From positions 1 to 64,000 of the IMG/VR virus record IMGVR_UViG_3300028676_000003: a DNA stretch of 64,000 bases; one strand, given 5' to 3'. The position numbers and the translations under genes are program-made. Shown here piece by piece: positions 12,616 through 33,884 of the stretch. The first letter of the stretch is position 1, and every line of letters starts with the position of its first letter. The notes under the pieces are model-generated. The model saw only the letters and a program-made list of their open reading frames with translations. It did not search any database and was not told where the DNA came from.

Positions 12616-12642
12616 AAAACCCTACTTCGGTAGGGTTTTTTT
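12616..12642 (+). terminator. intrinsic terminator
   Basis: AAAACCCTAC-TTCG-GTAGGGTTTT followed by a T run. Confidence 0.85.
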
Positions 12643-12655: not shown

Positions 12656-13917
12656 ATGAAATTAGGTAAAAAGAAATCTCAAAAGATTATTGACAAGCTT
12701 GATGATAAAATATATTCCAAAATTGACAATAAGATTTTCAAAAAGGTCAAAGGAAAACAATTCGGCATGGTTCAAGATAAACTGAATAGCGTTTATGAAT
12801 TGGGTTGGAATGCTGACATAGAAACAATTCAAGAATGAAATTAGGTAACGAAACACATAGTACTTTAAAACCTGAAATTAGCTATATGTGGGGCTTTATC
12901 AGGGAAGTTAAAGATTTAAAAATTGATATCAATTTAACAATAAGATTATTTGGTGATTTTGATGGAAATATTATAACTTTTCCAAAATCATTTTCCGAAG
13001 TATAAGTAAATTAATTTAGATAATGAATTTAGGAAGAAGAATAGATGAAACACTAGCACATGTTCTTGGACGTGTTATATTCACGGCAGTTGACGATAAG
13101 ATTTTCAACGCACTAGAAATAGATGATTACGAAAAAGCCAATGAGAATTTCCATAAGCTTGATTTATTTGATGATGTGGCTGACAGCTTAAATATTTTAT
13201 GGGAATGAAACTAGGTAATACAAAAAGTGAGAAAACTAAAGATGATATTTTTAAACTTTGGCTTATATGTAGAGATAGTCGTAACGAAGTAATAACTAAT
13301 AGTTTATCAAACCATGTACTTGTTTTAATAAATCATAATATATCACGTAAATTATTCAAACTAAATGAAATTAGGAATTAGTAAAAAGCTAGATACTTGG
13401 GGAGAAGGAGCTAGAATCGAAAATAAGATGAATAACTTAATAATCAAGTCTGTAAGTCAAACAATGCTTGCAAGGGTTGTTCATGGTGTAAAAGAGAAAA
13501 TTGAAGATAATCTATTTGATTTATTGGAAGTATGATACTAGGAGAACACATAAGAAATAATGTAGCAGAACTTGTTGAGAAGATAAGAGACGGTGTAAGA
13601 GCTGAATCAAATCGAAGAACCAATGTAAGTACTAAATTAAAGGTGTCAGGAATAATAGGTAATACAAACGAAGCAGTTTTACAATTTGAATTTCAATACA
13701 GATATACATTATGAAATTAGGTAAACCAATTGATAACTTATTTATGAATGGAAAGCTTGAGGGTCTTCAAACCCGACTATACAACAAGCTTAAGAAAGAA
13801 GTAGGAAAGAAGCTATATTTAGATATTGAAGGAACTATTTTTGATAACATATATGGTGAAAGTGTAGAAATTTACAATGAAGTTGAAGATTATTTCATGT
13901 ATTATTTGGTAGTTTAA
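12656..13917 (+). repeat. MKLG microprotein array, block A (7 coupled micro-ORFs)
   Basis: Starts at 12656, 12835, 13023, 13205, 13365, 13532, 13711; all ATG-NNN-YTA-GG. Confidence 0.9.
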
Positions 13918-13967
13918 AATATTATACATACCTTTGTAGAAGAAAATTAATAACTAAATTAAAATCT

Positions 13968-14534
13968 ATGGAATTTTTCAGTTTAAAGTATGTTGGTCTA
14001 ACAGACTATTCTCCAAAAGGTATCATTCAATGGGCCATCTTCAACAGTAAATGGTTACTATTACCGTTCTTGATGAAGTTGATATGTTCATTGGTTATGC
14101 TTGGATGGGAATACTGTTTCCACTCTGATGTATCAGCAGAAGAAGTAATGCACATCTTGCACGGTGTCGATATCGTAATGATTGCTTATTTGGTTCGCAT
14201 GATTGTAATTGGGTTATATAACTCGGCAATCGACAAATCACATAAGGAACTTGGTGAGAAGATATCATCAGGATTGCTTAAGATTAAATTATCAACATCT
14301 ATCATGGGTGTCTCATCAATCCACTTGTTACAATCTTTCATGCAGTTGCACGAAATGACTGATAAGAATTGGTTTATCATCAGTGTAAGGATTGGACTTC
14401 AAGTACTTATTCACTTGGTATTCATTTATGGTTCACATATCTTAGCTAAGATGGAGTATCTACATGACCTTGGTGAGTCTATTCACAAGGAAGAACATGA
14501 CGAACACGAACAAACAGAAACACACGACCACTAA
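13968..14534 (+). CDS. YqhA/UPF0114-family membrane protein
   Basis: LKIKLSTSIMGVSSIHLLQSFM and VDIVMIAYLVRMIVIG resemble the YqhA pattern; own promoter at 13929-13936. Confidence 0.7.
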   Translation: MEFFSLKYVGLTDYSPKGIIQWAIFNSKWLLLPFLMKLICSLVMLGWEYCFHSDVSAEEVMHILHGVDIVMIAYLVRMIVIGLYNSAIDKSHKELGEKISSGLLKIKLSTSIMGVSSIHLLQSFMQLHEMTDKNWFIISVRIGLQVLIHLVFIYGSHILAKMEYLHDLGESIHKEEHDEHEQTETHDH

Positions 14535-14722
14535 TGGCAAAAACAAAAACACCTACAGAACACTTGGTAGTAATCGTTCATAAGAAGGGCGAAGTACCAC
14601 CAAAGTTATATGACTGTCCTATTGGTGAAAGGACGAAAGAAGACGCAATATTGCAATCACAAAAAATTTATGAAAAAACTTATGGTACGAAAGATTATCA
14701 GTGGCATTACTTTGCTCATTAG
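14534..14722 (+). CDS. hypothetical protein
   Basis: 62 aa, TAATG coupled. Confidence 0.6.
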   Translation: MAKTKTPTEHLVVIVHKKGEVPPKLYDCPIGERTKEDAILQSQKIYEKTYGTKDYQWHYFAH

Positions 14723-15140
14723 TATTTTATTACTAACTGTATCGTGTAATCAACACATCAAAAAAAGTGTCTTTAAGACAAAAGACGGTAAAGGGTATGT
14801 CTACCAAGACACTGACGACCTATTATGGTATTACATCGTTTACAACCAATCAAATGGTATGTATGAAGTAAGCCCTGTAAACGGAACGCCCGACTTCGAT
14901 GCAAGTTCAAGCGTAAGCCTTGACTTATCATCAGCAAACACAAGCGACTTCGCAAGTGTATCAGAAAGCATGTCAGAAACTACAGGTGAATCAGGAGAGG
15001 CAAGTGCTGACAATGATGCCAGTGGTGAAGGAATGTCAGAATCAACTGGTGAATCAGGTGACGGTGGCGGTGAATCGACTGGTACTAGTGATGCAGGGTC
15101 CGATGGTGGTGGCTCTGATGGTGGCGGTGGTGGAGAATAA
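14670..15140 (+). CDS. putative lipoprotein with Gly/Ser/acidic disordered tail
   Basis: Signal ending LLTVSC; tail SESTGESGDGGGES...GGGGE. Confidence 0.7.
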   Translation: MKKLMVRKIISGITLLISILLLTVSCNQHIKKSVFKTKDGKGYVYQDTDDLLWYYIVYNQSNGMYEVSPVNGTPDFDASSSVSLDLSSANTSDFASVSESMSETTGESGEASADNDASGEGMSESTGESGDGGGESTGTSDAGSDGGGSDGGGGGE

Positions 15141-15164
15141 CCACACCTAGATAAAAGATATATA

Positions 15165-15211
15165 AAATCCCAATGAACATTTGTTTTATTGGGATTTTTT
15201 TTGTACCTTTG
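15165..15211 (+). promoter_or_regulatory. terminator hairpin overlapping the promoter for array block B
   Basis: AAAATCCCAAT/ATTGGGATTTT inverted repeat; TACCTTTG 15204-15211. Confidence 0.75.
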
Positions 15212-15215
15212 TTTT

Positions 15216-18200
15216 ATGGAATTAGGTAAACGTATAAATCGACACATACCAAGTGACTTTACTGATACAGTAATGATTACTCTTGATGATATAATCATGC
15301 GGATAAGTGTTGCAGGTAAGTCTTCTATTGATGTAAGTGGTTTAAGACTTAGCCCATTTTTATTTACATTATTTAGAAACATATCATTATGAAATTAGGT
15401 GAAAATATAAACAAACATGTACCAAATTATTTTACAGATGTGGTTATTGTTACATTTGCTAATAATACAATAATTAGCTTAGGTGTTAGAGGGAAATGTA
15501 AAATTAGAGAATTAAACCTTGACAGTTATATGTTTAGAATGTTTAGGGGTAAATTATTATGAAATTAGGAAGCACCAAGAAAGAAACAATAATGTATTTT
15601 ATTGATTTAGTCAATAAAAATTCATTCAAGGTAGCCTATGCTAGACTTGATTGTAGTATTCCTATATTCAATCAGGTAAGCCAAGGTATTAACATTATAA
15701 GAACATCAAGAGACAATGAACTTAGGTAAATTTAAATCAGCACCAAACATAAGAATCGCTATGGATATGATTCAGCGAAACCTTCAAAACAAATACATTG
15801 TTAATACTGGTGGTTTTGTACATAAGTACATGCCTAATCGTATGGGAGAAGTTATGCAAGAACGTTACACCTTATTGATATCTGATGATTCTAGGTGAGC
15901 CAAGAAGAGACAAATTGGATAAAAGTATATCAAATGATATAAGTTTTCCAATTATACAGAAAGGTCGAGAGACCTTAGAGTATGAACTATGGTCTAAAAT
16001 CAAAAATGACCTTGGAATTAAGGTAATGGATTCAACACCAAGAGTAACAAAGATTTATAACAAAATAGATATATGAGAAAACTTATACAAATAGGTAAAC
16101 CACTTCAACGAAAGTTTAATAATACTATGACTAATAGATTGTTAACTAGACTTAGTAATCGTGTTGAAAAAGACCTTGCATTTCCGTTGATTGAAGATTT
16201 AGTTAATAGCTACAAAACAGAGGATATAAGCGATTTTATGTCTTTATATATTAAAGTAAAACACGTAAATGCAGATGGATTTATTGGATGGTCAGCAGGT
16301 AGAGGTGTCGATGTTGGGCATGTCTTTGACGAATAGAACACGTCCCTTAAAAATTCACATACAACAAACAATATCTCATAAATGTGTTGATATTATTGGT
16401 GTGAACACCTACAACGATGTTAATGTTATTTTAACAAATCGGGTTATCCGAGCGGTTAATTTCGAAATCCGTAAAATACGTAAACCATGAAACTAGGGAA
16501 TAAAACAGATGTAAATACCGTAACTAATGCTTTACATGAGCTTAAGTGGGATATTGTTTGGGATGCTGTTGCGAAAGAAACAGGACTTGATAATATGGGA
16601 ACAGTGAGTGAAGCGATTTGGGATAAGATAGACGATGAATTATTCTTTGATTTTTATTATATTGACTCAATAAATCCAACATATCCATGAAATTAGGTAA
16701 ACAAAGAAGTAATCCAATTCGTTCACTTATTCAGTCTCTTGCTTATACAAAGTTTTGGGATGAAAGTTTTAGTGCTACAAAACCTGAGTTATGGAATGAT
16801 ATAAGCAGAAAGACTTGGGATAGAGTAAACAATGAAATAATTCCAATATCAGTTAGGAGTGAAATTAGGTAAACCAATACAAGATATAGTCACTAAGGCG
16901 GTTAAAAATCTATGTTACTATAAGTTATGGAATGATACCACAGCTGTAACTGACCGTGATTTATGGGAAGACTTAGCTGTTAGGATGTGGGATAACGGAT
17001 TTAATATAGAGATAAGTGAAATTAGGTAATCCAATAGGACAATATAAACATGTAACAATGCTGAATAATTTAGCGTTGTCAATCAGATGTAATGATGAAG
17101 ACTATGATATAGCTGATATTGTATTATGGGAAGGTGTAAAACAAGCAATAGGAAATGGAGAAGTTAGTCTTAGGAGAATTTATAGGGGTTAACCTAACCA
17201 AGCTTATAAATAAAAATCAATTGGATATGGATAAAATACTCTATTTGAAGGTTAATAACCTTGATTTTGATAACGTATTCAATGACATTTATAATAGCGT
17301 AACAAGAAACATTCAATTCAGACACTTGATTGAGGAACATATCTTGTATGACAGAGAACAAAGAGATGCAGTTAATCAAATGTTACCTTTTTAATATGGA
17401 ACTAGGAGATACAATATACTACGAAATGCGAAATAAGATATCAGATAATATTTGGTTTGTACTTGCAGATGAGAACTTGAACATTCAAACCGAAATTGGT
17501 AATGAAATTAATGAAGAAATTTGGGAAAAACAAATCATTTTTCCTAGTAGAGGTGAAATGATTTAATATGAAATTAGGTGAAAGACAACTAACAAAAATA
17601 CTAATAATCAATGATGTTAACACAATAATTAATATTGATTTGCGTCGAATATATTATAACGAAAGAATTAATTTCACTGGTAGTACGCTTCTAGGGAATT
17701 TAAGAATTATTAATTTAACTTGGAGTATACGTGAACTTAGGTAAAAGTAAATCAGAGAATTTTGAAGATTTAAATAAAGAACATAAGAAAGACTTACATG
17801 AGAATATTAAGGTTTCTCTTGATAGAGTATGTCTTGATTATTGGGATGATTGGGATAGATGGGCGTCAGGACCCGTAACACAATTAATAAAGGGAATTAG
17901 ACCAAGAGTATATGAATTTAGGAAAACAAATAGACAGCGTTGATTATCGAAATAATGTTCTTATATCGATAAACAATATGGAACAACAAATAAATGCTCC
18001 TAAGTATGATTATGTTCATGGATGGGGGCCTTGGGCTGACCTTGATTGGTTTGTTGATATATTTCATTCAGATTTTAGAGTATGGATTTAGGTATTTCAC
18101 AAGCAAATAAACTATCAGATATTGATAATGAAGGGAGATTTACATTCAGCGAATCAAGTAGATTCAGAATAAAGCTTAGACAAGAGTATTGTGATAAAAG

Positions 18201-18966
18201 GTATAGTGAAGGAGTTTTTATTACAGCAAATTTTAATTTTGTTGACTTAAATATACAAATAAATGAAATTAGGTAATCATACAAGAGAAACATTCTATAC
18301 AGTCCATCATATTTGGGCTAAGTTGCTTGAACGCAATAAGAATGAACGTATAGCTCTAACGCTTTGGAGAAACGTTAATAATTCAACTAATGATAATATA
18401 AGTCTTCAATTGGCTCCATATAAAATAAAACGAGTATGATACTAGGTAATAAGGTTGAATACAAGCCATATAGCGGAATTGGTTGTTATACTAGGGTTTA
18501 TATAAATGGTTTTATGCATAGTCTTATACATAGAATTGTATCAATTAAAGTAACCAGTAGACTAACATTAGGACTACAAAGGATTAGTAACAATAGAATC
18601 ATAATCAATGAAATTAGGTAGACACTTATACGATGTAACGGCAAGTGAAGGTGCTGGAAACATGCAGACTTTCTTCATGATGTATACCTATGGTAAGCTA
18701 GAAACTAAATTGGCTAATTGGATGTATGCTAGAATGATACGAGGTTATGGTAATACGTTACCAATAAATTATAAAGTACTATGGACATGGGGAAATTGGG
18801 ATTAGGAGAGCCGAGGTCGGTAAGTTTAGAACATGACGTAAGGAAACTATCAAACCATATGTTTGACTTGGTATATGATGTTAAACTAGAACACAGACCG
18901 TTCGTAAATACTAACGCTAAGATTAGACGAAATCTAATTGATGTGAGAAATTTACAAGTAAAGTAA
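15216..18966 (+). repeat. MKLG microprotein array, block B (about 21 micro-ORFs)
   Basis: Starts at 15216, 15389, 15559, 15716, 15885, 16073, about 16320, 16487, 16687, 16859, 17016, 17155, 17396, 17568, 17731, 17912, 18082, 18263, 18436, 18608, 18796. Confidence 0.9.
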
Positions 18967-19032
18967 AACTTTTTATCAAATAATTTGGTATATTGAATTA
19001 TTATACATACCTTTGTTAAAAATAAATCAGAT

Positions 19033-19239
19033 ATGAGAGCATTAGTTTGGATTCTTTTATTCATTATACAAGTTATTACTGGCGCAATGACCATTTGTAC
19101 TTGGATTCTTTGGGTAACAAGCTTCCCAACAAAAACAGATATGTTTTATCCTTGTTTTGCATCATTTATTATCTGTAGCTTAGCGTTTATTATTAATCAA
19201 TTCCTGCAACATACGTGGGATAATTACAAAGACAATTAA
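19033..19239 (+). CDS. small membrane protein
   Basis: Two TM helices; promoter box 19008-19015. Confidence 0.7.
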   Translation: MRALVWILLFIIQVITGAMTICTWILWVTSFPTKTDMFYPCFASFIICSLAFIINQFLQHTWDNYKDN

Positions 19240-19242
19240 ATT

Positions 19243-19659
19243 ATGAAAGATTTACAAAGTTTCATTACGGATATGGTTCGTATTGAAGAAATTGAGTCAG
19301 TTCAAGCATTTGGACACTACCCATTTCAATTAATGTCAGAGGGGTCTGATGATTCGTTAACTCTTGCCGTGCTTGACTTAGGTGATGTAATACCTTGCTA
19401 CAAGATATTTGCTGAACACTTAGCGAAGGGTGCCAAAAGAATCTATATGTCTATTGACTTTCCTGCGGGTGGTGACTTAGCAGAAGACTTCGTTGCTGTA
19501 TTCCAATACGAAAACGAAACCTTTAATGTTGTAGCGTTGCCATATGATGCTGAGGGAACACAATCTCCACAAGTAACAACTGAACAAAGCGTTCACTTAA
19601 GTGAACTCAAAACTCAGTTTGAAACGATTGTTAAAACTTTCATTAAGCAAGAGGCTTAA
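19243..19659 (+). CDS. hypothetical protein
   Basis: 138-aa ORF. Confidence 0.75.
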   Translation: MKDLQSFITDMVRIEEIESVQAFGHYPFQLMSEGSDDSLTLAVLDLGDVIPCYKIFAEHLAKGAKRIYMSIDFPAGGDLAEDFVAVFQYENETFNVVALPYDAEGTQSPQVTTEQSVHLSELKTQFETIVKTFIKQEA

Positions 19660-19680
19660 TATCAATCAAAAGAAAAGTTA

Positions 19681-19714
19681 AGGGATAATCTGATTAGTTG
19701 GATTATCCCTTTAT
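19681..19714 (+). terminator. probable terminator hairpin
   Basis: AGGGATAATC/GATTATCCCT followed by TTATT. Confidence 0.65.
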
Positions 19715-19733
19715 TATATTTAACCAATTAGCT

Positions 19734-22700
19734 ATGCTACTAGGAAAACCATTAGAATCAGAAATCCATAATAATCTATATGATTTATATACCAGTCATG
19801 GACGTATTGCTCATAATCGAAAATGGGAACGAAAACTATTATTACGTTTCTTTGAACTTGAAATGGTTTGGTGTGAAAGAGTTGGAATGACAGATGTTCA
19901 ATTCAAGCGAATAATGAAGAAGATTAACAAACGAAAACGCAAGGAAAATGCTATTAGGAAACAAAATAAGGATTAGAGACCAAGGCGGTAGAGCTATTTG
20001 GTGTGAAGTTGAAGATGAAATAAAAAGAAATGCAACTGAATATATCAATACTATTGTTAATCGCTTATTATGGACAAGGGTAATGGATGAAGTAGGTGAA
20101 ATATCAAGATACAAGATAAAAATATGAAATTAGGACAACCATTTGACTATGAAATAGCTGAGAGCTTAAACCATTTGTACGAAAATAGTGTTCATTTTCT
20201 ACAGAACCGTCTTTTTGATACCGAGACATATTTGCTATTAGATAACATCAATGTATTTGGTGCTTTGATGGTTAGTAGCGTATATATTCCAAGTCTTGAT
20301 GATGATGATTTTTAGATTAACTTGTATTTCTCGTTTATTAATCGTATCTTTGTATCATGAAAGTAGGTAGGTGTTATAAGGAGCAACTAAACCATGAGAT
20401 GAATCATGTTCGGTTTAGAATCGAAAATGTGATTGAGAAATCTAATGATTTAGAGAATGAATCTTTATTACGTCTATTTGGATTTAATTTCAGATTAAAT
20501 AATTTAGGAATATGAATTTAGGAATAAAGGTAAGTCCAAGGTGTCCAAGGCTATATGATAATCTACTTGATGATGTAAATATAGTTTGTGTGTTAAGGCC
20601 ACAAATACCGATTTATCGAATGAAAGACAGGATAGTTAGAGGAATTTTTAATTTATTTATGATAGATGAAATTAGGTAATCAACCGAAAAAGAAACTTGA
20701 ATATGAAACAGTTTATTATGAAATTATAAATGGTATCAGTGATGAACCGTTTTATATAAGAAATAATAACCTTATATACAATCTTTCAGCAGAAATTGGA
20801 GAAGAATTAATAGTCTTTAAAGTATTAAAAGTATGAAGCTTATACCAATAAACAGAGGTAGTGTTGCGACACCAATCTCAACAGAACGAACCAATATGTG
20901 GTATAGTATTGTAAAAATAAAGAATTGGGAATTAGAGGAAGTAAGAAACACTATAAAGGATAATGTAATTGAAACCGTATTCGGGTTAACCCAATTCAAC
21001 AATAAAATGAAGATATGAAATTAGTTCCAATAGCATTTAGATATAAAATCATGCAACTGAACGCTACGCTTTGTGAACATGTAATGGATAATGAGAGAAG
21101 ACAGAAAAAAGTTCATGAATATTGGTCAGTTTGGAAGTTGAGGGTCCGACAAGATGTATTTGCAAATCAATTTACTAATATGGTCAAATGGAAGTAGGAA
21201 AACAGATAACAAGCGAAGCTCTTGAACTCTATAAGGTAATTATCATTACTAAGAAAGAGGTTGAAGAAGTTGTTCTGTTCACTGGTAATAGAAATATGGA
21301 CCCGATAATATCACTAAGATGGACACTAACAGCACTGGCGCAACAATTTGAATTAGATATATGAAATTAGGAAGACAATTAACGAAGGAAGATTTAGTAC
21401 CATGGAGTATTTATCACGAGTTAAGTAGGGATGCTAATACCAAAGCTCATATGCATGCAATGAATGAAGGGTTTAGAGACCTAGATAATTTAAGGGAGTC
21501 AATAGTAATTATGTTAGTAACTTACGGTAGATTTAATTCATTATGGAACTAGGAAAAGAAATACAAAATAAATTTACCTGTTGGGAAGTTTATGAAAAGG
21601 TACGCAGAGAAACTGAAAAGAATTCAAATGAATTTCAATCATTAAAAAAATTAAAACTAAAACTAAGTAGTTATAATCTAATTGTATGGATTTAGGAAAG
21701 ACAACCAACTATAATAAGCAAAGGTTTAATACAGTAATGCTAAGGCTTAAGCTTATTAATCGGAGCGGATGTATTTCAGCTAATGAAGTTTATAATATGA
21801 GATATAGATTTGAAGGTTTATTATTAACACCAAGAATAAATAAATTAATATGAAATTAACAAAGCCCGATAGAAACATTCATTTAACCTTATTTGTTTTA
21901 GGTATGAAAATAAAAGCTTATACGCAAAGAGCACATATCTTTGATATGATTGAAGTAACAGAACAAACAATTATTTTTGATGAAACACCAAGTATGTTAT
22001 GAAACTAGGAGAAAAACCATATTTCAATCTTCAACAATATATTCAATCTAAATGTGCTGAAACACTCTTTTATGAAGTTGAAATTGAATCGAAAATAGAA
22101 ATCCTATTCAGATTTTTAGTTTTGGATATAACATGTAAAAACTTATGAAACTAGGAAATAAAACAAGCAAAAGGAATATTGCAAACTTCAAGGAAGAACA
22201 CACAAGAAAGATGTTCAATACGAACGAAGCCTATGCAGTATGGCATATGTTTAATCGTATTAATAGGAAGATGATTAATACTCATGATATAACAATACCA
22301 TGGAATTAGGAATACCTGTAAGGATTAATTTTTATGATGAAAAAAATCCAATCCGTAAGTTAAAGAACGATATTTGGAGTTTTGTAGCTCCATTTGTTAT
22401 GTTACGTGACGCTCATGAACCATTTAATATTAGACCAAGTGTCGTAAATGGAATAATTAACCAAGATTTAGAAAATAGTTTTGATGAATTATGAAGCTAG
22501 GACAAAACATAAAAAAGAAAAATTCTCCAAGGAGACTGGTTGATATTACTGTAGCCCAGTTGAATATTGATTTACATATTCACCTTACAATAATTGGATT
22601 AGAATATAGAGTAATCATGGAATTAGGTAAATATACTAACATATGCGTTTAGGAGCAAGAACAGGAGCAACACTAGGTACGCTCATCGATATTGAAACAC

Positions 22701-25700
22701 CAATGTTTGAGATTATCAAACAAAATATAAATAACAATAAAGCGGGAAATCAGTTACTGAGTAACGTTAGCCGACCAATAAGTAGGATTCATAATTCAAT
22801 TTGGACAGCGGTAAACTTTAAATTAATGACATATGAAGCTAGGACAGAATATAAAAGAAGATTACAGGACGGGAATAGATTTTGGCCTTTTTTTTAGTAA
22901 AAATGGACAAATAACTGGTACTGGAATGCAGATATTTAGTAAAATAACAAGACACTTGATAGCATTAGAAACACTAAATGTAAATGAAATTAGGAGAAGC
23001 TAAAAGCAGACAATCACGTAGAAATATCAAAGAAGTGGTTACAACAGATAGTATTATGATGCTAATTAATCAGTTTAGACCTCTTATTCCAAACGGACCC
23101 AATAAATTTATTGGAAGATTAAACAGATATAATATTTACATCAATGAGATTAGGTAAACCAATCCTTCATCAACTAACAATGAGCCTTAACTTTGTGTTT
23201 AAGTATCAAAAATTTGACTCGAAGGTTTCTTCGTTAAAGAGAAAATGGAACTTTCAACAATTTGAAATTATTACAATTACACACTTATGAAACTAGGAGA
23301 AAAGATACATAACTATGAAGATATTGAAAATTTAATAAAATCACCTCTTGATGATAAGCACATGTTCAACGGAAAGTATGAATTGGCTAGACTTATTAGA
23401 AGACTGATGATTAACTATAATGTTTTTGTAAGAGAAGAGCAAATATGAAACTAGGGAAAAGAGTTGCTAATTATCGAGATATTGAGTTTTACATTAAAGG
23501 TATTCTTGATGATAAATACATGTACTATGATGTACCTAAAGAAGCACGAAGTATAAGAAGCAATAGAAGTTATAATATTTTTATTTATATGGACATATTC
23601 AATAATTTAAGATGAAACTAGGAGAACCATTAATGAAACGAAACTTAGGTGTTCTCAACATGAATATTAGATATCTACTTGATAATACAGGTCAGAATAT
23701 TAAACCCGCAGATTTTTTATTGGTTCGAGGACTGAGAAGAAGAGTAGTAATGTATAATTTTAGAGCAACACAACGAGAAATATGGAATTAGGAAATAGAA
23801 TAAGTGATAGTAGAAAACATATCTATTATGAGATAAAATCTACTTGTGTGAAATCTAGCGAATTAGAAGCTAAACGATTGAGAACCAACCTAATTGATTG
23901 TAACATACACATAGCAAGAATAAGATGAAGCTAGGAAATACGTTAAAAAATAATTTACATGTTGAAATTAAAACTATTCCAAGTAACTTGTTAGTGAAAA
24001 TGGACCACAAGCGACCTAATAATCCATTCTTTCAAAGTGATAATATGATGATACAAGCTTACAACAGAATGACATTGTATTTGGGAAATATTGTTAAAAT
24101 AATAAATAATCCATGAAACTAGGAAAGAAAACAGACATAAAATGGTCCGAAATGGGAATGATGCAGACCGATATGGTTAAAATAATAGCCAGTAATTCAA
24201 AATTCGTTTATCCAATCATTCTTAGGATTGAAAGACAATTAACCGATTTTAAAGAAATGATAAGCTATGACGCTAGGGAAGCCTATATCCAAATCCAGTA
24301 ATTACTATAACCGAATACTCGCTATTGAAACTGTTCGTAATCAAATGGGTGGACAATTTCTTATGAAGGATATACACTTTGAATATTTAGATGAACAAAG
24401 AAAAAGTCGTGAAGTAGGAGTATTCGATTTAATGGTTGTTTATAAAGATATGACACTATGAAACTAGGAAAAAAAACTAACCATGAGGCAATCTATAATG
24501 GATTATATGTAGCTAAGCAAAGTATACTGAAAACAATAACGCAACATTTACATACTAAGTATTTAGAAGCGAGACAAAGCTTAGGTGTTAGACAAAGTAT
24601 TGTAAATACAATTTGGATTCAAATAATATAATATGAAAATAGGGAAATCACTTAGGCAGAACACTAAGATTTTTAGGACACAAGGACTTGATATGCTAAT
24701 AACATACCAAATCCTCTATGCTAAGGCAAGCCACTATTCGTCATTGGATATTATAGACTTCTTTAGGGAGTTCAGAATTACAACATTTAGTAATGATAAC
24801 ACACTATTCATATGAAAATAGGAAAATCATTTAAGATGGAAATAGGTTGTAATAGAAGAGAAATGATTGATTCAATGATTGAAAACAAAGACTTATATAT
24901 AATGTCAAGACAACACAGAACACAAGCTATTATTGATTATTTTAGCGGATATATACCAACAACATTTCGATATGGACTTAGGAAATAGTACAGTAAAACG
25001 ATTCAACACAAAAAAGATGCTTCAACTCATTTATCTCAGACAGTATCGAATGAACGTCAGTAACGAATGGCGTAAGAATGGTAAAAGATTCTCTTTGGTT
25101 TATCCAAATGATACATTTATGCCGTTGTTGAATCGTTACGGACCAACAATAAAATTATGAATTTAGGACCCTCAAAATATAATACTCTAGGAAAAAAAGT
25201 ATTTTATGAAGTATTAGAACGAACATATCAAATCTATCATACTATGGCAAAGCTTAGTATTGAAGACACACCAACACCACTTAACGTAGTTGAAAGTGAA
25301 ATAAAACAAATTAGAATATGGACATAGGAAAACAAGTAACACAGATGCTAACGCTGGACATTACATCACAAATATTAAACAAGATATATAATCAATATCA
25401 GGTCGTTATACATAGTACTGGTGTAGACTTATTCATGAGGTTTAATGTAGAAAGACACAAGCAATGGATTTAGGGAAATCAGTAAATGAGAAATTACTAA
25501 ATAATATAACAATTGAAGTATTCAATAAAATATACTATATGCTAGGTAATGGTAATGCTTTTGGAATGGATTATTTTATTAGTCTCGAATTTGATGAAGG
25601 TATAGAATGGATATAGGGAAATCACAAGTTTATTTGGTACAACAGTATGTAACGATGGTAGTTGTCAATAAGATATATATTGTTCCATTTGATAGACCAA

Positions 25701-28700
25701 AAGAAATGAGATGGAATAATTTTCGGACAAGTTTCGTTGAACAAAGACTTAAGTTATGATTCTAGGAAAGCTACAAAGAAAAAATATTGGTATGCCAATG
25801 AGATGTGTTCATAATGAAGTTAGAACCATGTTGATACATTCAGATAAAGATGGACGAACAGAAGTCTTACAAACAACCGATAAAATTCTATCATTAACGA
25901 GAAGAAATATTGAGATATGAAACTGGGAAACACACAAAAAGTTCACTTAGGAACTGAACTTAAATATGTTAATTGGAACGTTAGAAGCAAGGTTGAAGAT
26001 AAAGCAACGAGAAGCGCAACACTACCAATAATGCGAATTTTTGTCAGAATAACATTCAGTTCAATAAGAGAAATATGAAACTAGGCGATATAAAAAAAAA
26101 TGATATAAAGGTTGTTGTTTCTGATTGGCATAAAGAATCAGTATTTGATTTTCCTTTTAAATTTGGACTAAGTAATTATTACATCTTTTCAAGATTTAGA
26201 AGAACAGTAACAGTAGGACAAAATTTTAGTTTATGATATTAGGTAAGAAAATAGATAACGGCAAGTTCATTCAGAATGAAATTAAAACATTTCGTACAAG
26301 ACAAAATTATATGAAAGATTTAGAAATAAATCGTTATGTTTATGACCAAAGTCTTAGTGTATTTAATACAGTTAGAATTAATCTTAGCTTCATTTATCAT
26401 CTAGCATATAAATTTTACTTATGGATATAGGAGAATACACAGGTAAGCTGATAACAAAGACGATATCTAAGATAATTGAAGGAACTGGTAAAAACATTCA
26501 TTCAAAAAGAAATGTTCCACGTGGAACATTTCATCAACCATTAGAACCAATTGATATATGGTTCAGCATAACAACCCAAATGAATAGATTATGAACATAG
26601 GTAAAACAGTAGAATCACAAGTAAGAAGCGAATTAGCAACGGCAAAGCTATATGAGCAGTGTTTTCATCACGAATTACATAGCAGAATGTCAAAAGAAGT
26701 ACATAAGCTAATTGATGCTAGTATTTGGGATAGCCTAATTGAGAAGGTAACTGTTATCGCTAAGTGTGAAGAGTTGGAACGATGGAATTACGAAGCAATG
26801 AGTCAATGGAATTATGAAAATAGGTAAAGAAGTGGTTAATACAATACAAACTAGACTAGGACCTATATATGGAAATTGTTTTATTTATAATAAGATTCCT
26901 ATGAGTAGAAGGATTCATGAACAAGTAAGGAAACGAATATGGAACAACTTAGATTCAACAGTAGTTCAAATTACTATTCTTAATTTAGAAAAATTATGAA
27001 TTTAGGAAAAGAAATTGGTAGAGAACTTAACAGCAAATGTTATAGGGGACTGCATCAATTTACAAGTTATCATCATTTGGAACGCAAGGTATCTAAAGAG
27101 TTATGGTCGTATCTTGATGAACGGATTTGGGATAGAGTAATTGACATAGCACAATTGGCTTCGAATGGAGTTGATGATAGTAAAACACTGGAAGAAGAAT
27201 GAAAATAGGAAAAAGAGTAATACCGATTGGTCCAAAAGACACATACAATGAAATTACACGTGGTATGATGCTTGAAATTAAAGGAAAGGTTAAGTATAAT
27301 CCAATTATGGATGTTGTAGATAATACTTGGACAAGGATATTTATTCGTCTAATAAATTTTCAAAATATGTTATGAAATTAGGAAAATCACTAAATTACGA
27401 AACTGGTGTTTACCAAAGCGGTATTCAATCAATAACTGATAACTATACTAGGAAAGGACAAACAGAAGACATACGAATTGAGTTGATACGTCCGTTAAGA
27501 CGTATGAAACAACGAGTGAAAGCCACGTTAAATGACATGACAAGGATAGATAGCTTGAGGTTCTTTACAATTATTGATTTCGACGATGCAGAATTAGACC
27601 AAACTGAAAGTATAATATGAAACTAGGACATGCACCAATTAGATGAATATAGGAAATAAGTTAGATAATACTATCTTACATAAGCAACAAATATTGCTTA
27701 AACAAGAAATGGGTCAACAAATAAGGTTTAATGGTAATGTATTAACAAATTATGACGTGGTTGATTTGTTCATAATAATAAGACATGCAGTAACAAATCA
27801 AATACGTGGATATAGGAAAAACAACAAGTGATGAAATATATTTTAATATAAGTGATTTTCATCTTAAGATACTCACACAGGAAAATCACAATATGTTCAC
27901 AAGAACTAGAAGAGAAGAAATGCTTTTGATTGTATTTCAAATACCACGAAACCTGAGAGTAAGTCTGAAATTAAAAGTAGGAAAAAGATGATATTAGGAA
28001 ATAGCACAAGAGATAACGTAAGCATGTGTTCAAGCAACATCAATCATAATCTATTGACTACCATACAAGGTACAATAAGAAGAGGTGTAAGACAGCGCAA
28101 AGAAGAATTAGCTCTAATTGTCTTCATGTATGAAAGAATAAATTCATTGAGGAAATTATGAAATTAGGAAAATCAATTCAAGGAGTATCAGGTAAAATAA
28201 ATAGTGATTTATTCAATAATTGTTATAAACACAGGTTTAATGACCTGACTTCAATGAAGTTATATGAATTAGTTTATGTAGCGATTTGGCAGAAGACTAG
28301 TCGAAGATTATATATTAATATGTCAATTATTAATATATTAATACCAATATAATTCACGATATGAAATTAGGACAAGAACAATCAAGAGCATTACATAAAC
28401 AAAGAACCCTCATGCTTCTTAGAATGATGAAAGAGAAGAACGAGAAAACAAAAAACATTAAAGTAGTAGCACAAATATTCAACAGAATAAGACTACAAAG
28501 AATAAGCTTATGAAATTAGGAAATAACATAGACCCAAAAGGAATATTTAATAAGATATTTCCAACTGGAATAAGCATTGTATCAATAGTTGTTTCAGCAA
28601 ACAGACTAATAAAAATGAATGTTCATTCAAGCAAAGAAGCCTATCAGGCAAGTAGGGGAATGGATATCGGAAACATTCTTTCAGTAGAAGTTGATATTGA

Positions 28701-31700
28701 CCATAATACAATTATTCACAATTACTCACAACCAACAGAATTATGAAAATAGGAGAACACACATCAATGAAATTATCTTTCGGCTTTGTACAAGACTTAT
28801 GGTTCGCATTGACTAGTGAACAAAATAAGACACTTAAGGACGCTGAGTATGTAACTAAGCCTGAAATACGCATAGGAATACCACAAATTGAATATGCTAT
28901 TTATGACGGGTGTAATTCATGTGCAGGATGAAACTAGGAAAATCGATAGGCGGGTTAATGGAAACTAAGGTTGCATTAAACACACTAGGAATGGCTTACC
29001 AATTAACAGAGGAAAGATATATCGGTTCAATTGATACTCGGTTTATGACCCTGAGATTTACCAAACCAAATACGGTAGTATGGTGGGAGCTTCAAGAAGA
29101 TAGAGATTTGGACCAAATGATTAAAAATATTAACGATGAAAATAGGTAATAAAACAGATAAAACACTAATAACTAGTGAAATGGAGAAAACGATTGTTAA
29201 TCATGTATGTTTACAAGTAAGAAGAATTGACTATCGTAACTTCAAAGAAATTAATTTAGTTTCTGATAATATTAGTCGATTATGTGGTTATATCAGCCAA
29301 AAGGTAATAACCTTAGATACATTAAGAAGATGGAGTTAGGAAAGAAATTACATAGACATACTGATACCGTGGCTTATTTCGTTGAAGGAATGGTTAATGC
29401 TGACTTTCATAGAGATAACACTAAGATTGCTTATCAATTCCTTAGAGAAGTCAGAACGAGACTTGATAACCAACTTGAACAATTCAAGATAAGAAACATT
29501 ATACACAGAAAACCATTACCACGTAGAAAACCATAATTATATGAAATTAGGACCAACACAGAAACACCACATAATGTCACCGCTTAACGATATACCTTTA
29601 GGTTGTCATATCACATTTATCAATGAGAAGATGGTGTTGTATGATACAGCAGAAACCATACGAATTTATTTGGATGATTTCATGGTTAAGATTGATTTCA
29701 CAGATATAGGAATTGACTCATTAGAACTTTATAGAATATGAACATAGGAGAATCAAAAAACAGAGAAGTATTCAATGCGCTGGCAGAAGTTCCGACAAGT
29801 TGGCAGTTCTATAACAAACAAGGAAATCTTTATATTGTAAATGATGATACAACCATACAGATTCATATAAGAAACTTTACGATTAGATATCCCGAAGAAA
29901 TCTTAAGTCTATATGAACCACCAAATGAAGAACCCTAATGGAATTAGGAAAAGACATTAAAAGACAGCCAAGCATCTATTCGATAGAAGAAACAATATTC
30001 AACTATACTGAAATTAGGGTCCTCAGAGAACCAATCACTAGAATGAGACTCAGACTAATAAGACAAATGCCACGAACAGGAAGCAGATTTAAATTATGAA
30101 AATAGGAAAAAACATAGAACCAAAACCAACAGCAACGATTCTTAACAGAAGTCTAGCTGATAAGATGTGGAAGACCGTAACAACCAGTGTTCATTTTAAT
30201 GCACGTCAAGGAATGAATAGACCAATGCGAATGATAAGAGACCTAATGGGGATAACATTTGATTTATGATACTAGGAGAGAACAAAAGAAGCATGTGGAA
30301 CAATACAAAGGTACTTGAAAATTCAAGTGTATTTAGAAGCCAAATGATAGGACAAATCAACGAGACATATTCCAAGGAATATAAAGCTCATATATGGGAT
30401 ATAGGGTTTAAAAGGATGCCTGAATTATTAAGAAATAAATTATTTATACGTGATACTAGGTAAATCAATGCTCAAAGATTTCTATTACATTGAAACAGGG
30501 ATGATAAGAACCGAAATGATGAAAGTTATTATTAAAAGTAGGATATTGGTTAAGATTAATAAAACATTTCCCAATGCAAACAGAAATAATATATGGAATC
30601 AATTCATAAGTATGCAAACTCTAAAAATAACAAATATACGATGATACTAGGAAAATCACAGAAGATACCACAACCCAAACGCAGATTTACCAATGATAAT
30701 CCAATATTGACTAATCTAACAGCACAATGGGATGAGATAGAGAAAACACCAAATAATCTTAACGAATACTATAAGTATAGAGACACACAAGACTATTTGT
30801 TGATATTCAGTATTCTAGGCATCTATAAACGAAAATTAAGATTTTATAGATGAAATTAGGAAAACCACAAGGCTTTGATTTAGTAGGAAAAACATCAGCG
30901 TTTAGAGCTATAACACAATGGGAGATTTACGGAAATACAACAGGCGATATGACATTCCTTATATGGAATATGTCAGAGAACATAAATCTAATTAGAGTAA
31001 AAAGAATAAATCAACCATTATGAAAATAGGTAATTCACTATCTAAAAAATATACCAAGCTTGTAGAAAATATTGTACAACACACATATAATGAATATAGA
31101 AAAAATACTGAAAAATATCTTAAATCTATAAACAGAGAGAATACAAGACCAATAGGAACTGCTAAACCTCAGAATATATGAAACTAGGCTACCCAATAAA
31201 GAAATATAAGCTTCTTAAGCTCGTTGAATCAGGGTTTACGTCTCCTGATATGAATGTGGGCTATATGAACCAAGTTTGGAATATGAATAGTGATGTGTAT
31301 ATAAGCAGAATACTAATGATTAAACCTTTAATACTAAGACATTGGAAATAGGAAAACACATACCAAATCATCTGCCTGAGAACAAGTATCTGCATAAGAT
31401 AGCACAACTCAGAATGTTCTTCTTTAAGTCGATTCGAGTTGAATATTATCTATATAACCATGTAGTAAATAGAATGTGGATTAAAGTAACTCAATTAGTA
31501 GAACCAATAACAAATAACGAAATATGAACCTAGGAAAACCAAAACACCAATGGGAAGAAAGATTTGATATGTATCTTTTAAGAAGCGAAATATCAGCAAG
31601 GGTTTCTCTTAGCTTTAAGACTCCTGAAAGACACGATATATGGAATAAATTAGTGATAACAAGACTTATAATAGGAAATATACAAAAGATATGAAATTAG

Positions 31701-33884
31701 GAAAAACAAAAAAAACCGTATTACATAAAGAGAATATAACAATGTGGAAAGGTTTCTTTCTTGAAATTGACAATCTAACAACAGGAAGAGTAAGATATCA
31801 TCCAATTGGGATGGATAGAAAGATAAATAGACAAACTCAGCTAAATTTAAAATTGAAGTGATGAAATTAGGAAAATCAGTAATAAAATTATATAGAGGAA
31901 TATCACAATTCTCTAATCTTAGTCCTATAACAGTAAGTTGGAACCTCAACCTAGCAGTAGGAAGAAAGATACATGACCCTGACGTAGCTATGCCGATTAA
32001 AAGCTATTTAATGTTGGAGTTTATGGAACTAATAATAACCACCGAATTTAACCACATATGAACCTAGGAGAACAAATACAATACTTACCTGATAATAAGT
32101 ATCTTAAAAGAGATGCTAATCTAAGGTTTGTCTTATTTAAAACACAACCAAAAGTAGACCTTGATATTAAAATATATGTAGGTAAACTAACTTGGGCCAG
32201 CGTTGAAAGACACCTTAGAACAATTAAACCCAATATATATGAATCTAGTATATGAAACTAATACATATCAATACAACCAAATATAGACATGACCAACTTA
32301 TGGATATGTCAGAAATGAGATACTATATGAAAGAACAAATAGATGATAACGATATTGATAACCATGATGTAAAAACTCCTATACGAAATATCGCAAGAAA
32401 TCTAATAGAAATCAATAGACGAAAACTTAAAACACCCAAGGTATGATACTTAAGCCAATCCTAATGAAAAGAAATAAGACAAACCAAATAGCTGATGTTG
32501 AAGATATGAGATATCTAATGATGAGATATATTAATGAAGCAAACCTCGTTGATAGTAAAAACCTTATATGGCAAATCAGAACAAACCTATTAGAAATCAA
32601 TAGAAGAATACCAAGAAACATATGATACTAGGAAAACAAGTAAAAACAAAAATAGGTGAAATGGCAATACCGAATGGTGTTCCTTTAGCAATGTATAGCA
32701 ATGATAGTCCAATTTTTATGGTGTATGATAGAATAAGAAGACTACTAGGACATAAAAGTAGAACCAATATAATATTATGAAACTAGGAAAACGAATAAAC
32801 CCAGACGTAAGAGCAGAAACAAGAGATATCATTATACATACTATTCACTACTTTGAACACAATATAGTTAAAAAGTCTGATTTTTATAAGATACAAGATA
32901 TGTACGGAAATATCCTAAGAGACCTTAAGCCATATGTAACCGCCCATAACGACATTTTAAAGGAAAAAACGGACCACAGAGAATATATAATACAAAGATA
33001 AACAAAATGAACATAGGAAACCATATAACCAAATACAAATACTCATTTGAACAATCTAACGATAAAACATATATAAGGCTTCCTATGTGTAAGTATATAG
33101 ATAAAGGATATGCATATCATACACAACAAATCATAAGGCAAATGACAGATAAAATGATTAGCATACTTATGAATAAAATAAGACAAATATGACTCTAGGA
33201 AAAGAAGTTGAAGACATAAGATATAAAATCTTAAGAAGACAAGACCTATACGGAATGAGAAGCGAAATGCTTAATATCATCCATAATGAGAACCATTCTA
33301 CCGTGATAAATCTTATATGGGAAATGCCTACACGGATGCCAAGGACCCTCACACAACAAATACCTCGGATATGAAGCTCGGAAGGAATATAAGAAAAACA
33401 AGGAATATTGCCGTTGAAATTATACGAAATGAATCATGTAAGCAACTACTCGACAAATGCGCCCCTAAAGCCTATAATTACCACACGAACTATACCAATA
33501 ACAAAAGAAAACCACTTCAACTACAAACAGAACTATTATGAACATAGGAAACCATATAATACAAAAAAGAATAATACATCATGAAAAAACAAATATGATT
33601 AAAATAATGATACACGTAATCATAGAGAAATATACCATACAAACAAGAGACCTCGTATGGGAAAATACCATTGTTGACCCAATAATCCTAATGAGAAAAA
33701 TACAAGAAATATGAAACTAGGAAAACACTTAAGAAAGGAAACACATATATTCTGCGGTTCCGATAAACTTAGCGAAAAGATAGTAGACGACCTTATTCAG
33801 AGTCATGTCTATAAAGAACTATGCCAAGTAAGAAGAGACTTGAATTTCGAACTCATCCCACCTAAGTATCATCTAATATATTAA
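19734..33884 (+). repeat. MKLG microprotein array, block C (about 82 units, mean period about 170 bp)
   Basis: Starts at 19734, 19948, 20124, 20357, 20512, 20666, 20833, 21015, 21188, 21361, 21543, 21686, 21850, 21999, 22145, 22300, 22491, 22617, 22643, 22833, 22984, 23144, 23287, 23445, 23612, 23782, 23925, 24113, 24267, 24458, 24633, 24812, 24972, 25157, 25318, 25464, 25607, 25756, 25917, 26075, 26233, 26421, 26591, 26814, 26996, 27199, 27372, 27617, 27643, 27806, 27988, 28158, 28361, 28510, 28743, 28928, 29136, 29330, 29541, 29738, 29938, 30096, 30266, 30450, 30641, 30850, 31020, 31178, 31342, 31524, 31691, 31861, 32058, 32252, 32443, 32622, 32777, 33007, 33189, 33371, 33538, 33711. Confidence 0.9.
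26513..26528. promoter_or_regulatory. parS: parS-like centromere palindrome
   Basis: TGTTCCACGTGGAACA (inside a perfect 20-bp palindrome at 26511-26530) matches the bacterial parS consensus. Confidence 0.7.

What the first reader, a model, noticed from the sequence alone, without database searches (positions are those of the whole stretch)
12835..33721. The junction motif is constrained at nucleotide level (NTAGG) and supplies stops for the upstream ORF
Seen: codon 3 is almost always TTA, CTA, ATA or GTA. All 18 Ile-type units I counted use ATA, never ATT; the exceptions are CTG at 25917 and CTC at 33371. TAGG is therefore nearly invariant. With ATGA starts, the upstream ORF ends at the overlapping TGA. 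With ATGG starts it often ends W-x-TAG on the invariant TAG (KWK* 21188, LWN* 21543, LWI* 26421, RWS* 29330). In the other frame it ends NEIR* on GGTAA (18263, 18608). Inference: the 11-mer guarantees termination and reinitiation for most upstream frames, making any inserted segment a plug-in cassette. It may also be a recombination or protein-binding site.
Basis: partly seen in the sequence, partly recalled or inferred. Interest (0 to 1): 0.8.

Follow-up and report, generated by a model that had tools for sequence, protein, structure and literature searches.

The report
Shared head of phage gene cassettes
A 368-kb phage carries 108 tiny genes in a row, and each opens with the same 11 letters, which start the new protein, usually supply the stop for the previous one, and mark where a related phage has gained, lost or swapped genes.

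Summary
Window 12656-33884 holds 108 tandem + strand ORFs (48-87 aa), and 100 of them begin ATG-NNN-NTA-GG. The 11-mer occurs 101 times against 6.4 expected. Codon 3 is NTA in 98 of 100 motif heads. In 84 of 107 junctions the upstream stop lies inside the next cassette's first 14 nt.

Most of the "nucleotide-level" signal at the codon-3 A is a genome-wide bias for A-ending codons near starts. This phage has no Shine-Dalgarno sites and uses Bacteroidota-type promoters. Baseline NTA near starts is about 0.8, not 0.5, and only a modest excess remains. [LI]-G also fits a protein-level N-terminal helix pattern. The motif guarantees a stop in one upstream frame only. In the other frame the stop depends on GGT-AA, which is enriched where it is needed.

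A diverged relative (L332) shows the units are real genes (dN/dS 0.38) with mosaic histories. All resolvable cassette gains, losses and replacements break within about 8-14 nt of the start ATG, but one deletion scar does not.

Best reading: a portable start/stop head of a fast-turnover array of small genes, which also acts as a microhomology joint. It is a new variant of known modular shuffling such as T4-type PeSLs.

The parts
12656..13917 (+). Sub-array 1: 7 cassettes, all with the ATG-NNN-NTA-GG head
   Evidence: Preceded by a terminator-like hairpin at 12616-12639.
13905..15215 (+). Interruption 1. Bacteroidota-type promoter (TTTG-N20-TACCTTTG, 13905-13936), UPF0114 membrane protein (13968-14534), two further ORFs, terminator-like hairpin 15164-15198
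15216..18966 (+). Sub-array 2: 21 cassettes. The first ATG lies 4 nt after a -7 box (TACCTTTG, 15204-15211), which predicts a leaderless transcript
   Evidence: Box-to-start spacing of 4-5 nt is from PMC6847099.
18984..19733 (+). Interruption 2. The same promoter as interruption 1 (18984-19015), ORFs 19033-19239 and 19243-19659, terminator-like hairpin 19680-19711
19734..33884 (+). Sub-array 3: 80 cassettes. One 41-nt gap holds a -7 box (TATCTTTG at 20345) 4 nt before the ATG at 20357. No -7 box occurs after 26158
15389..15399 (+). Example of the commonest junction (58 of 107): ATGA head, upstream ORF ends on the overlapping TGA
21188..21198 (+). Example of an ATGG head: the upstream ORF ends ..W-K-TAG on nt 8-10 of the head (14 such junctions)
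18263..18276 (+). Example of a +2-frame junction: the upstream ORF ends ..N-E-I-R-TAA on GGT-AA, nt 12-14 of the head (12 junctions end at nt 12-14)
25917..25927 (+). Exception: head with CTG at codon 3 (no TAG). It has an ATGA start, so TGA is the stop. Its L332 orthologue has CTA
33371..33381 (+). Exception: head with CTC at codon 3. ATGA start
27617..27642 (+). Remnant cassette: a head plus about 15 nt, then the next head. L332 has four full cassettes at this position. This is a deletion scar that is not head-to-head
27199..27209 (+). Clean head-to-head indel. L332 carries one extra cassette (v09) exactly between the orthologues of the cassettes starting at 26996 and 27199, with no scar
32252..32625 (+). 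Two adjacent cassettes without the head (MKLIH.., MILKP..). Both have ATGA starts, and the head is missing in the L332 orthologues too

Best explanation
The array is a hyperplastic block of 108 real, fast-diverging small genes. One modelled member folds as a single helix. The phage is a 368-kb jumbo phage whose host does not use Shine-Dalgarno sites, most likely a member of the Bacteroidota.

Each cassette carries a short portable head, ATG-(A/G)NN-NTA-GGN-AAA. Three overlapping constraints hold it in place.
1. It encodes M-x-[L/I]-G-[K/N/E], the start of an N-terminal amphipathic pattern.
2. It is an A-rich, weakly paired initiation region that sits downstream of the AUG. It therefore works whatever coding sequence lies upstream, and also when the AUG is the 5' end of a leaderless transcript.
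3. It read in the other two frames closes the preceding gene: TGA then TAG in the +1 frame, and TAA via GGT-AA in the +2 frame. As a result about 80% of cassettes carry no stop codon outside the next head, and translation can pass from gene to gene by termination-reinitiation.

Because every boundary has the same 11-15 nt, unequal or inter-genome recombination within the head adds, removes or replaces whole cassettes in register.

Shown here: the motif statistics, the stop usage, purifying selection on the ORFs, the mosaic history, and breakpoints at the heads.
Inferred: coupling and reinitiation, leaderless starts, microhomology as the cause of the breakpoints, and the fail-safe role of TAG when codon 2 toggles between A- and G-initial.
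For: - Motif and stop statistics.
- No Shine-Dalgarno motif upstream of 62 of 64 other genes or of the cassettes.
- 22 TTTG-N17-23-TANNTTTG promoters against 6.2 expected. -7 boxes lie 4 nt before the ATGs at 15216 and 20357. The spacing rule is in PMC6847099.
- The bias for A-ending codons near starts appears in array and non-array genes alike.
- Predicted unpaired probability is raised from -15 to +30.
- Residues 3, 7, 11 and 15 are hydrophobic. AlphaFold2 models one cassette as a single helix, pLDDT 89.8.
- L332 orthologues: pooled dN/dS 0.38. Silent divergence ranges from 0 to 0.36 between cassettes, chi-square p 2e-6.
- About 11 structural differences in 6.4 kb, with change-points at the heads and clean head-to-head indels at v09 and v11.
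- nt 4 differs A/G in 5 of 25 orthologue pairs, which toggles the TGA on and off. In v04/u68 the operative stop demonstrably switches between TGA and TAG.
- GGT-AA is enriched where the +2 frame needs a stop (13/27 vs 10/78).
- In a related array (L280), codon 3 is ATT or GTG in 7 of 20 ATGA heads but CTA in both ATGG heads.
Against: - G10 and G11 cannot be separated from Gly4, so the protein-level share of the constraint is unknown.
- The codon-3 A is kept in all 25 [LIV]G heads whose upstream ORF is in the +2 frame, where TAG cannot act as that ORF's stop.
- In orthologue pairs nt 9 changed in 2 of 25. This is not clearly below the silent baseline of 0.18, so direct evidence for selection on that base is weak.
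- An array with the same head in a phage that does use GGAG sites (L006, GC 40%) also keeps TTAGG: 21 of 23 Leu heads against 0.33 in gene bodies. The argument from missing Shine-Dalgarno sites does not explain this.
- Only one diverged relative was found.
- Selection for intact genes alone would also place surviving breakpoints at gene boundaries.
- One deletion scar (27617-27642) is not head-to-head.
- There are no expression data.
Confidence: 0.55

Rival explanations
1. Protein motif only. The head is conserved because M-x-[LI]-G-K is needed by the proteins, for example as a helix start or a common N-terminal tag. The codon-3 A is just the phage's preference for A-ending codons near starts. 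The stops and the breakpoints at gene boundaries are by-products of tight packing and of selection for intact genes.
For: - The hydrophobic period-4 pattern starts at residue 3.
- Gly codon choice at nt 12 matches background usage and drifts between orthologues, 5 of 25.
- Baseline NTA near starts is about 0.8.
- nt 9 is not significantly slower than other silent sites between orthologues.
- TAG is kept regardless of need.
Against: - 98/100 still exceeds the 0.8 baseline (84/86 where TAG is not the stop, p 3e-6).
- GGT-AA is enriched exactly where a +2-frame stop is needed, so overlap stops are under selection.
- Spacing is 78: 27: 0 by frame.
- The same 11-nt head sits on unrelated protein bodies in other phages: L006 is rich in aromatic residues and Cys, L289 has SV repeats.
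- Control scans for M-K-L-G heads written with YTC, YTG or YTT found no array in IMG/VR.
Confidence: 0.22
2. Dedicated cis-acting signal. TAGG, 5 nt after the AUG, is read by a specific factor. Candidates are a phage RNA-binding regulator or endoribonuclease acting on the polycistronic early transcript, a ribosome contact, or a site-specific recombinase or nuclease on DNA (an integron-like system).
For: - Four invariant bases in 100 of 108 heads and no change at nt 8, 10 or 11 in 25 orthologue pairs.
- The head recurs on unrelated bodies in at least three other viral lineages with GC 25-40%, with and without Shine-Dalgarno sites.
- Control scans with nt 9 or nt 11 changed find no arrays.
- Breakpoints lie at the heads.
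Against: - TAGG is not avoided elsewhere. There are 57 non-head copies in the 21-kb array, about the same density as outside it.
- There is no inverted partner or hairpin. CCTAA is not enriched and the head region is predicted to be open.
- No recombinase or integrase was found among 30 of the larger window ORFs scanned against Pfam. There is only an HNH endonuclease at 1549-2019.
- No Rfam family matches in the array.
- L280 tolerates ATT at codon 3.
- One deletion scar is not site-specific.
- The other 300 kb of the genome could not be read.
Confidence: 0.15
3. No constraint. The head is simply inherited from one ancestral cassette by tandem duplication, or the pattern is a chance or annotation artefact.
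For: Codon-3 types cluster regionally: TTA early, CTA around 21-24.5 kb, ATA from 24.6 kb on. This shows local shared ancestry.
Against: - Bodies have diverged beyond recognition: 11 of 5,778 pairs at E<1e-3 and five short nucleotide matches. The heads nevertheless stay intact.
- 101 matches against 6.4 expected.
- dN/dS is 0.38.
- Independent gene calls agree with the starts.
Confidence: 0.03

Closest known systems
PeSL (promoter-early stem-loop) cassettes in the hyperplastic regions of T4-type phages (Arbiol et al. 2010, PMC2839356; Comeau et al. 2014, PMC4122927)
   Same: A short sequence is repeated at the boundaries of many small, mostly unknown, non-core genes. Insertions, deletions and replacements between close relatives break at these repeats. 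The repeat also has a gene-expression role.
   Different: PeSLs are intergenic promoter-plus-terminator units. Here the repeat is 11-15 nt, lies inside the coding sequence (codons 1-5), carries no promoter or hairpin, and doubles as the stop of the upstream gene. The same phage does have PeSL-like intergenic cassettes, but these lie at 35-57 kb, outside the array.
Translational coupling of overlapping genes (ATGA overlaps, termination-reinitiation). This comparison rests on my own knowledge of E. coli trp genes, RNA phages and many phage operons, not on a paper read here.
   Same: Four-nt ATGA overlaps at 58 of 107 junctions, and stops within 14 nt of the next AUG at 84 of 107.
   Different: The stop-bearing sequence is one conserved module repeated 100 times. 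It offers a second in-frame stop (TAG) and a conditional stop in the other frame. It operates with no Shine-Dalgarno site. Coupling itself was not tested.
Integron gene-cassette arrays
   Same: Long one-directional arrays of small, mostly promoterless, unrelated ORFs with a repeated boundary element and cassette-level gain and loss.
   Different: No attC-type imperfect inverted repeat and no integrase in the window. The boundary element lies at the 5' end inside the ORF. The resemblance of TTAGG to the GTTRRRY core is recalled from memory and was not supported by any test.
Capsid-targeting sequence shared by the polymorphic internal-protein genes of T4-type phages (recalled from memory, not checked in a paper here)
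   Same: Unrelated small proteins in a plastic locus share a short conserved N-terminal sequence.
   Different: That sequence is about 10 residues long and has a known protein-level role in prohead targeting and cleavage. Here only 4-5 residues are shared, and there is no evidence of packaging or cleavage.
   Same: Two other families show overlapping stop/start junctions built from conserved termini. One has M[KQ][VI]GDLV.. heads with ..EV[IL]CK-TAG ends and occurs in several viral contigs (L094, L111, L162, L165, L193). The other has ..YYAR* / MQDK.. junctions and lies just upstream of the GP88 gene of a related 362-kb phage (L012). In the first family the upstream TAG also sits in downstream codons 3-4.
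   Different: Those are recognisable paralogue families with similar bodies. In the first family codon 3 relaxes to GTC, GTG or ATT when the start is ATGA. In the window array the bodies are unrelated and the A is kept regardless of need.

Membership tests
Integron cassette array | attC site: imperfect inverted repeat with inverse-core and core sites at each cassette boundary | tested here: not met
   The inverse of the head core (CCTAA, TCCTA) is not enriched in the array: 14 and 12 copies in 21 kb against 43 and 40 in the remaining 43 kb. The head occurs on the - strand once. The head region is predicted to be unpaired.
Integron cassette array | Adjacent intI tyrosine recombinase and a common promoter | tested here: inconclusive
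   No recombinase appears among 30 window ORFs scanned against Pfam. The remaining 300 kb of the genome was not available.
PeSL-type regulatory cassettes (T4-type hyperplastic regions) | Intergenic unit made of an early promoter plus a stem-loop terminator between the shuffled ORFs | tested here: not met
   Cassettes overlap and there is no intergenic space. Only 15 -7 boxes lie in 21 kb, and only two are correctly placed before a cassette. Terminator-like hairpins occur only at sub-array borders.
PeSL-type regulatory cassettes (T4-type hyperplastic regions) | Differences between close relatives break at the repeated boundary element | tested here: met
   In window vs L332, 5' change-points lie at -7..+8 in 11 of 11 cases, and 3' ends lie at +11..+14 (one +24) in the five cases with conserved ends. 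Clean indels occur at v09 and v11. One scar is not at a head.
Translationally coupled overlapping genes | Stop of the upstream ORF overlapping or within a few nt of the downstream start | tested here: met
   58 ATGA overlaps, 14 TAG at nt 8-10, 12 stops at nt 12-14, and 2 one-nt overlaps, out of 107 junctions.
Translationally coupled overlapping genes | Downstream translation depends on translation of the upstream ORF | not testable with these tools
   This needs reporter assays or ribosome profiling.
CRISPR or other non-coding repeat-spacer array | Identical direct repeats of 20 nt or more, separated by non-coding spacers | tested here: not met
   The repeat is only 11 nt and partly degenerate. 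The units are ORFs tiling the strand in an AT-rich genome, with dN/dS 0.38 against orthologues. No Rfam hit lies in the array.
Stop-codon-reassigned phage (TGA or TAG read as sense) | ORFs lengthen markedly when one stop codon is read as sense | tested here: not met
   The longest + strand ORFs are essentially unchanged with TGA or TAG read as sense.
Known protein families (Pfam, PHROGs) | A significant profile match for cassette proteins | tested here: not met
   Ten cassette proteins gave no hit better than E 0.01. There was no tblastn hit in 50,697 GenBank phage records. The only homologues among 5.8 billion proteins come from this phage and L332.

The most novel reading that the evidence does not exclude
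The head is a self-contained plug-in module that has evolved, possibly more than once, in phages. It would be a translation-initiation element located downstream of the AUG that needs no upstream context. It would be fused to fail-safe stops for the preceding gene, and would also serve as the recombination joint. Together these would give an integrase-free cassette system that lets a phage keep and exchange a library of about a hundred small host-directed proteins. Its recurrence on unrelated protein bodies in other viral lineages (L006, L280, L289) would then reflect selection for the module itself, not common ancestry of the proteins.
Probability: 0.25. Interest if true: 0.8.

Novelty: new variant of a known kind. 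Interest (0 to 1): 0.6.

Why it matters
Jumbo phages carry large blocks of tiny unknown genes, and how these blocks are expressed and renewed is poorly understood. This array gives a compact, testable case. One 11-15 nt coding-embedded sequence appears to solve three problems at once in a host without Shine-Dalgarno sites: starting each gene, stopping the previous one, and keeping recombination in register.

If confirmed, it would extend the PeSL idea of "regulatory cassettes as recombination joints" from intergenic promoters to the coding start itself. It would also offer a natural model for AUG-downstream determinants of initiation in Bacteroidota. Finally, it would give a simple sequence signature for finding such gene libraries in metagenomes.

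Tried and rejected
- Stop-codon reassignment (TGA or TAG as sense), which would have made TAG the main stop: ORF lengths do not change.
- Integron-like attC: no inverted partner and no integrase in the window.
- A Shine-Dalgarno-like role for AGGA: it lies downstream of the AUG, no start codon follows at a suitable distance, and the phage uses no Shine-Dalgarno sites.
- Avoidance of TAGG elsewhere, as expected for a cleavage site: not seen.
- Close relatives for breakpoint mapping:
  - Near-identical copies of the phage in other samples carry no differences.
  - Flanking and embedded genes (336 aa, UPF0114) find only the phage itself in IMG/VR.
  - GP88 relatives at about 70% identity have no such array within 10 kb.
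  - Only L332 was informative.
- Protein function: Pfam, PHROGs, GenBank phages and the ESM Atlas gave nothing.
- A three-head pattern scan of IMG/VR returned mostly chance hits.
- The metagenome scan returned many simple satellites (L220, L225, L226, L281) that are not ORF arrays.
- The bacterial and archaeal genome scan found no array. The Tenacibaculum hit (L408) is a non-coding 163-bp tandem repeat.
- My first orthologue test of nt 9, against all third positions, suggested p about 0.01. The fairer baseline of silent differences at conserved residues (0.18) removes that significance.
Full report
WHAT IS THERE

The window is the first 64 kb of a 368,549-bp viral contig (IMGVR_UViG_3300028676_000003). 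The same sequence, without a single difference over the stretches compared, occurs in four other assemblies.

From 12656 to 33884 the + strand is tiled by 108 small ORFs of 48-87 aa, median 59. They form three runs of 7, 21 and 80 cassettes. Two short blocks of ordinary genes separate the runs, each with its own promoter and terminator-like hairpin.

One hundred cassettes begin ATG-NNN-NTA-GG. The 11-mer occurs 101 times in the window against 6.4 +/- 2.5 in shuffles, and only once on the other strand.

ARE THESE GENES?

Yes.
- No stop codon is reassigned.
- An independent gene caller chose the same starts.
- A diverged relative was found through one cassette protein (L332, a 6.4-kb Logan contig). 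It has 35 cassettes, of which 25 are orthologous to window cassettes 64-101 at 29-98% amino-acid identity.
- Pooled dN/dS is 0.38, and many pairs lie at 0.1-0.3.

The proteins match no Pfam or PHROG family and no GenBank phage. Among 5.8 billion proteins they match nothing beyond this phage and L332. Bodies are unrelated to each other: 11 of 5,778 pairs reach E<1e-3. They do share a pattern of hydrophobic residues at positions 3, 7, 11 and 15. One cassette is modelled as a single long helix, pLDDT 89.8 from a shallow alignment.

HOW MUCH OF THE MOTIF IS NUCLEOTIDE-LEVEL?

T8, G10 and G11 follow automatically from [L/I/V]-Gly, so only the A at nt 9 is a silent-site signal.

Against array-wide codon usage the enrichment is extreme (p 3e-17 for Leu, 3e-6 for Ile). 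That baseline is wrong, however. NTA among NTN codons is 0.96 at codon 3, 0.82 at codon 7, 0.73 at codon 11, and about 0.40 beyond codon 12. The 69 non-array genes of the window show the same gradient: 0.75-0.83 at codons 2-4, falling to 0.39.

This phage has no Shine-Dalgarno motifs. Only 2 of 64 genes have one, leaders are A/C-rich, and nothing is conserved upstream of the cassettes except T at -1. It carries 22 promoters of the Bacteroidota type, TTTG-N17-23-TANNTTTG, against 6.2 expected. The region from -15 to +30 of the cassettes is predicted to be less paired than the rest. Most of the A at nt 9 is therefore the local peak of a general initiation-region bias in a system without Shine-Dalgarno sites (background: PMC6847099).

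An excess remains. In heads where TAG is not the operative stop, 84 of 86 have A, against a baseline of 0.81 (p 3e-6).

Between orthologues the changes per 25 pairs are: nt 8, 10 and 11 none; nt 9 two (both A/G); nt 6 twelve; nt 7 nine; nt 12 five. The fair silent baseline is 0.18, so this comparison does not by itself show selection on nt 9.

STOPS

Start-to-start spacing is 2 mod 3 in 78 junctions, 1 mod 3 in 27, and never 0. In the majority frame the upstream ORF ends on TGA of ATGA (58 junctions) or, when codon 2 starts with G or C, on the head's TAG (14 junctions). In the other frame 12 junctions end at nt 12-14, mostly on GGT-AA. Thus 84 of 107 cassettes take their stop from the next head.

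A stop at nt 12-14 is present in 13 of 27 heads that need it and in 10 of 78 that do not (p 3e-4). Overlap stops are therefore selected. TAG, by contrast, is kept whether or not it is needed.

A plausible reason is that codon 2 is very variable. nt 4 differs A/G in 5 of 25 orthologue pairs, which toggles the TGA on and off. In v04/u68 this visibly switches the operative stop between TGA and TAG, so TAG is intermittently exposed. Losing both stops would add a median of 8 codons to the upstream protein.

Related arrays agree with this reading. In L280 (GC 25%), codon 3 is ATT or GTG in 7 of 20 ATGA heads but CTA in both ATGG heads. In the unrelated M[KQ][VI]GDLV family the A is relaxed under ATGA but was always present under ATGC in the loci examined.

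BREAKPOINTS

Window and L332 differ by about 11 cassette-level events in 6.4 kb: 10 L332-only cassettes, about 14 window-only cassettes, and one change of order. Silent divergence varies from 0 to 0.36 between neighbouring cassettes (chi-square p 2e-6), which is a mosaic history.

Where an orthologous cassette has a non-orthologous neighbour, identity jumps from about 0.3 to 0.8-0.95 at -7..+8 of the ATG in 11 of 11 cases. On the 3' side, homology ends at +11..+14 (one +24) of the next head in the five cases with conserved ends. Two insertions (v09, v11) are scarless head-to-head events. One window remnant (27617-27642) is a deletion scar that is not head-to-head.

This rests on a single relative. 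Selection for intact overlapping genes would also enrich such breakpoints, although in-register joins without microhomology would be rare.

TRANSCRIPTION CONTEXT

-7 boxes lie exactly 4 nt before the ATGs at 15216 and 20357. In Flavobacterium johnsoniae the transcript starts 4-5 nt after the box. The first cassette of a run is therefore probably leaderless.

From 26158 to 33884 there is no -7 box, so about 40 cassettes would share one transcript. Initiation signals must then lie at or after the AUG. This gives a rationale for a conserved head downstream of the start. It is an inference.

WIDER OCCURRENCE

Pattern scans found ORF arrays with the same head on different protein bodies in other viral and metagenomic contigs:
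- L006/L211: GC 40%, GGAG sites upstream, TTA at 21 of 23 Leu heads against 0.33 in gene bodies.
- L007/L289 and L005: SV-repeat bodies.
- L280, L286, L267.

Control scans with nt 9 changed to C, G or T, or with nt 11 not G, returned only isolated chance pairs and no array. With so few independent lineages the power of these controls is limited. No array was found in 185,579 bacterial and archaeal genomes.

COMPARISON WITH KNOWN SYSTEMS AND VERDICT

The array works most like the PeSL-mediated modular shuffling of T4-type hyperplastic regions (PMC2839356) combined with classical overlap coupling. It is not a member of the PeSL kind, because it has no intergenic promoter or stem-loop. It is not an integron, because it has no attC-like repeat and no integrase was seen.

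I rate it a new variant of a known kind. The mechanism (portable start/stop head plus microhomology joint) is held at about 0.55.

Noticed in passing
window 35980-57000, e.g. 37585-37700, 39360-39470, 41715-41830, 44250-44380, 52185-52285: Intergenic cassettes of about 110 nt are repeated before many genes. Each holds a hairpin with a T-run, whose 3' arm overlaps a TTTGGTAG -33 box, then a TAHHTTTG -7 box, then a conserved leader (..CAAACTAAAACACATACA..ATG). This closely parallels T4-type PeSLs, in a presumed Bacteroidota phage.
   Followed up: partly
window 48961-49638: Three tRNA genes by Rfam (61, 45 and 36 bits). ARAGORN calls only one, and gives it an abnormal anticodon loop (two-base anticodon 'ga').
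   Followed up: no
L012:5693-8084 (IMGVR_UViG_3300042502_001233, 362 kb): A jumbo phage with a GP88 protein about 70% identical has a different tandem family just upstream of its GP88 gene. It consists of about 12 ORFs of 58-86 aa, most ending ..YYAR* and overlapping the next start MQDK.. (ATGCAAGATAA). This is another conserved-junction array, at roughly the position the MxLG array occupies in the window.
   Followed up: partly
L094, L103, L111, L162, L165, L193 (several IMG/VR contigs, GC 37-46%): A widespread tandem family of ORFs of about 55 aa starting M[KQR][VI]G[DS]LV, many ending ..EV[IL]CK. The GGAGG site and the ATG of the next gene are encoded in the upstream C-terminus, and the upstream TAG sits in downstream codons 3-4.
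   Followed up: partly
L001:300-1250 (IMGVR_UViG_3300030330_006597) and L408:150-900 (Tenacibaculum agarivorans contig70): Non-coding tandem repeats (62 nt and 163 nt) contain the exact 11-mer ATGAAATTAGG. They are probably coincidence, but both lie in AT-rich environmental sequences.
   Followed up: no
window 37988-38539: A 183-aa ORF outside the array starts with the cassette head (ATGAACTTAGGAGAA, MNLGE..). This is a long protein carrying the array-type N-terminus.
   Followed up: no
window 1549-2019; 38599-39372; 48321-48800; 51344-52177; 55651-56634: Recognisable genes in the flanks: HNH endonuclease, GP88 (PF17338), a tyrosine/dual-specificity phosphatase-like protein, a weak ParB-like match, and DUF932. 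Nearly all other ORFs have no family.
   Followed up: partly
window 12656-33884: Codon-3 type is regionally clustered: TTA mainly 12.6-23 kb, CTA 21-24.5 kb, ATA from 24.6 kb on. AT skew rises steadily along the array (0.14 to 0.32). This suggests growth by local duplication from one end.
   Followed up: no
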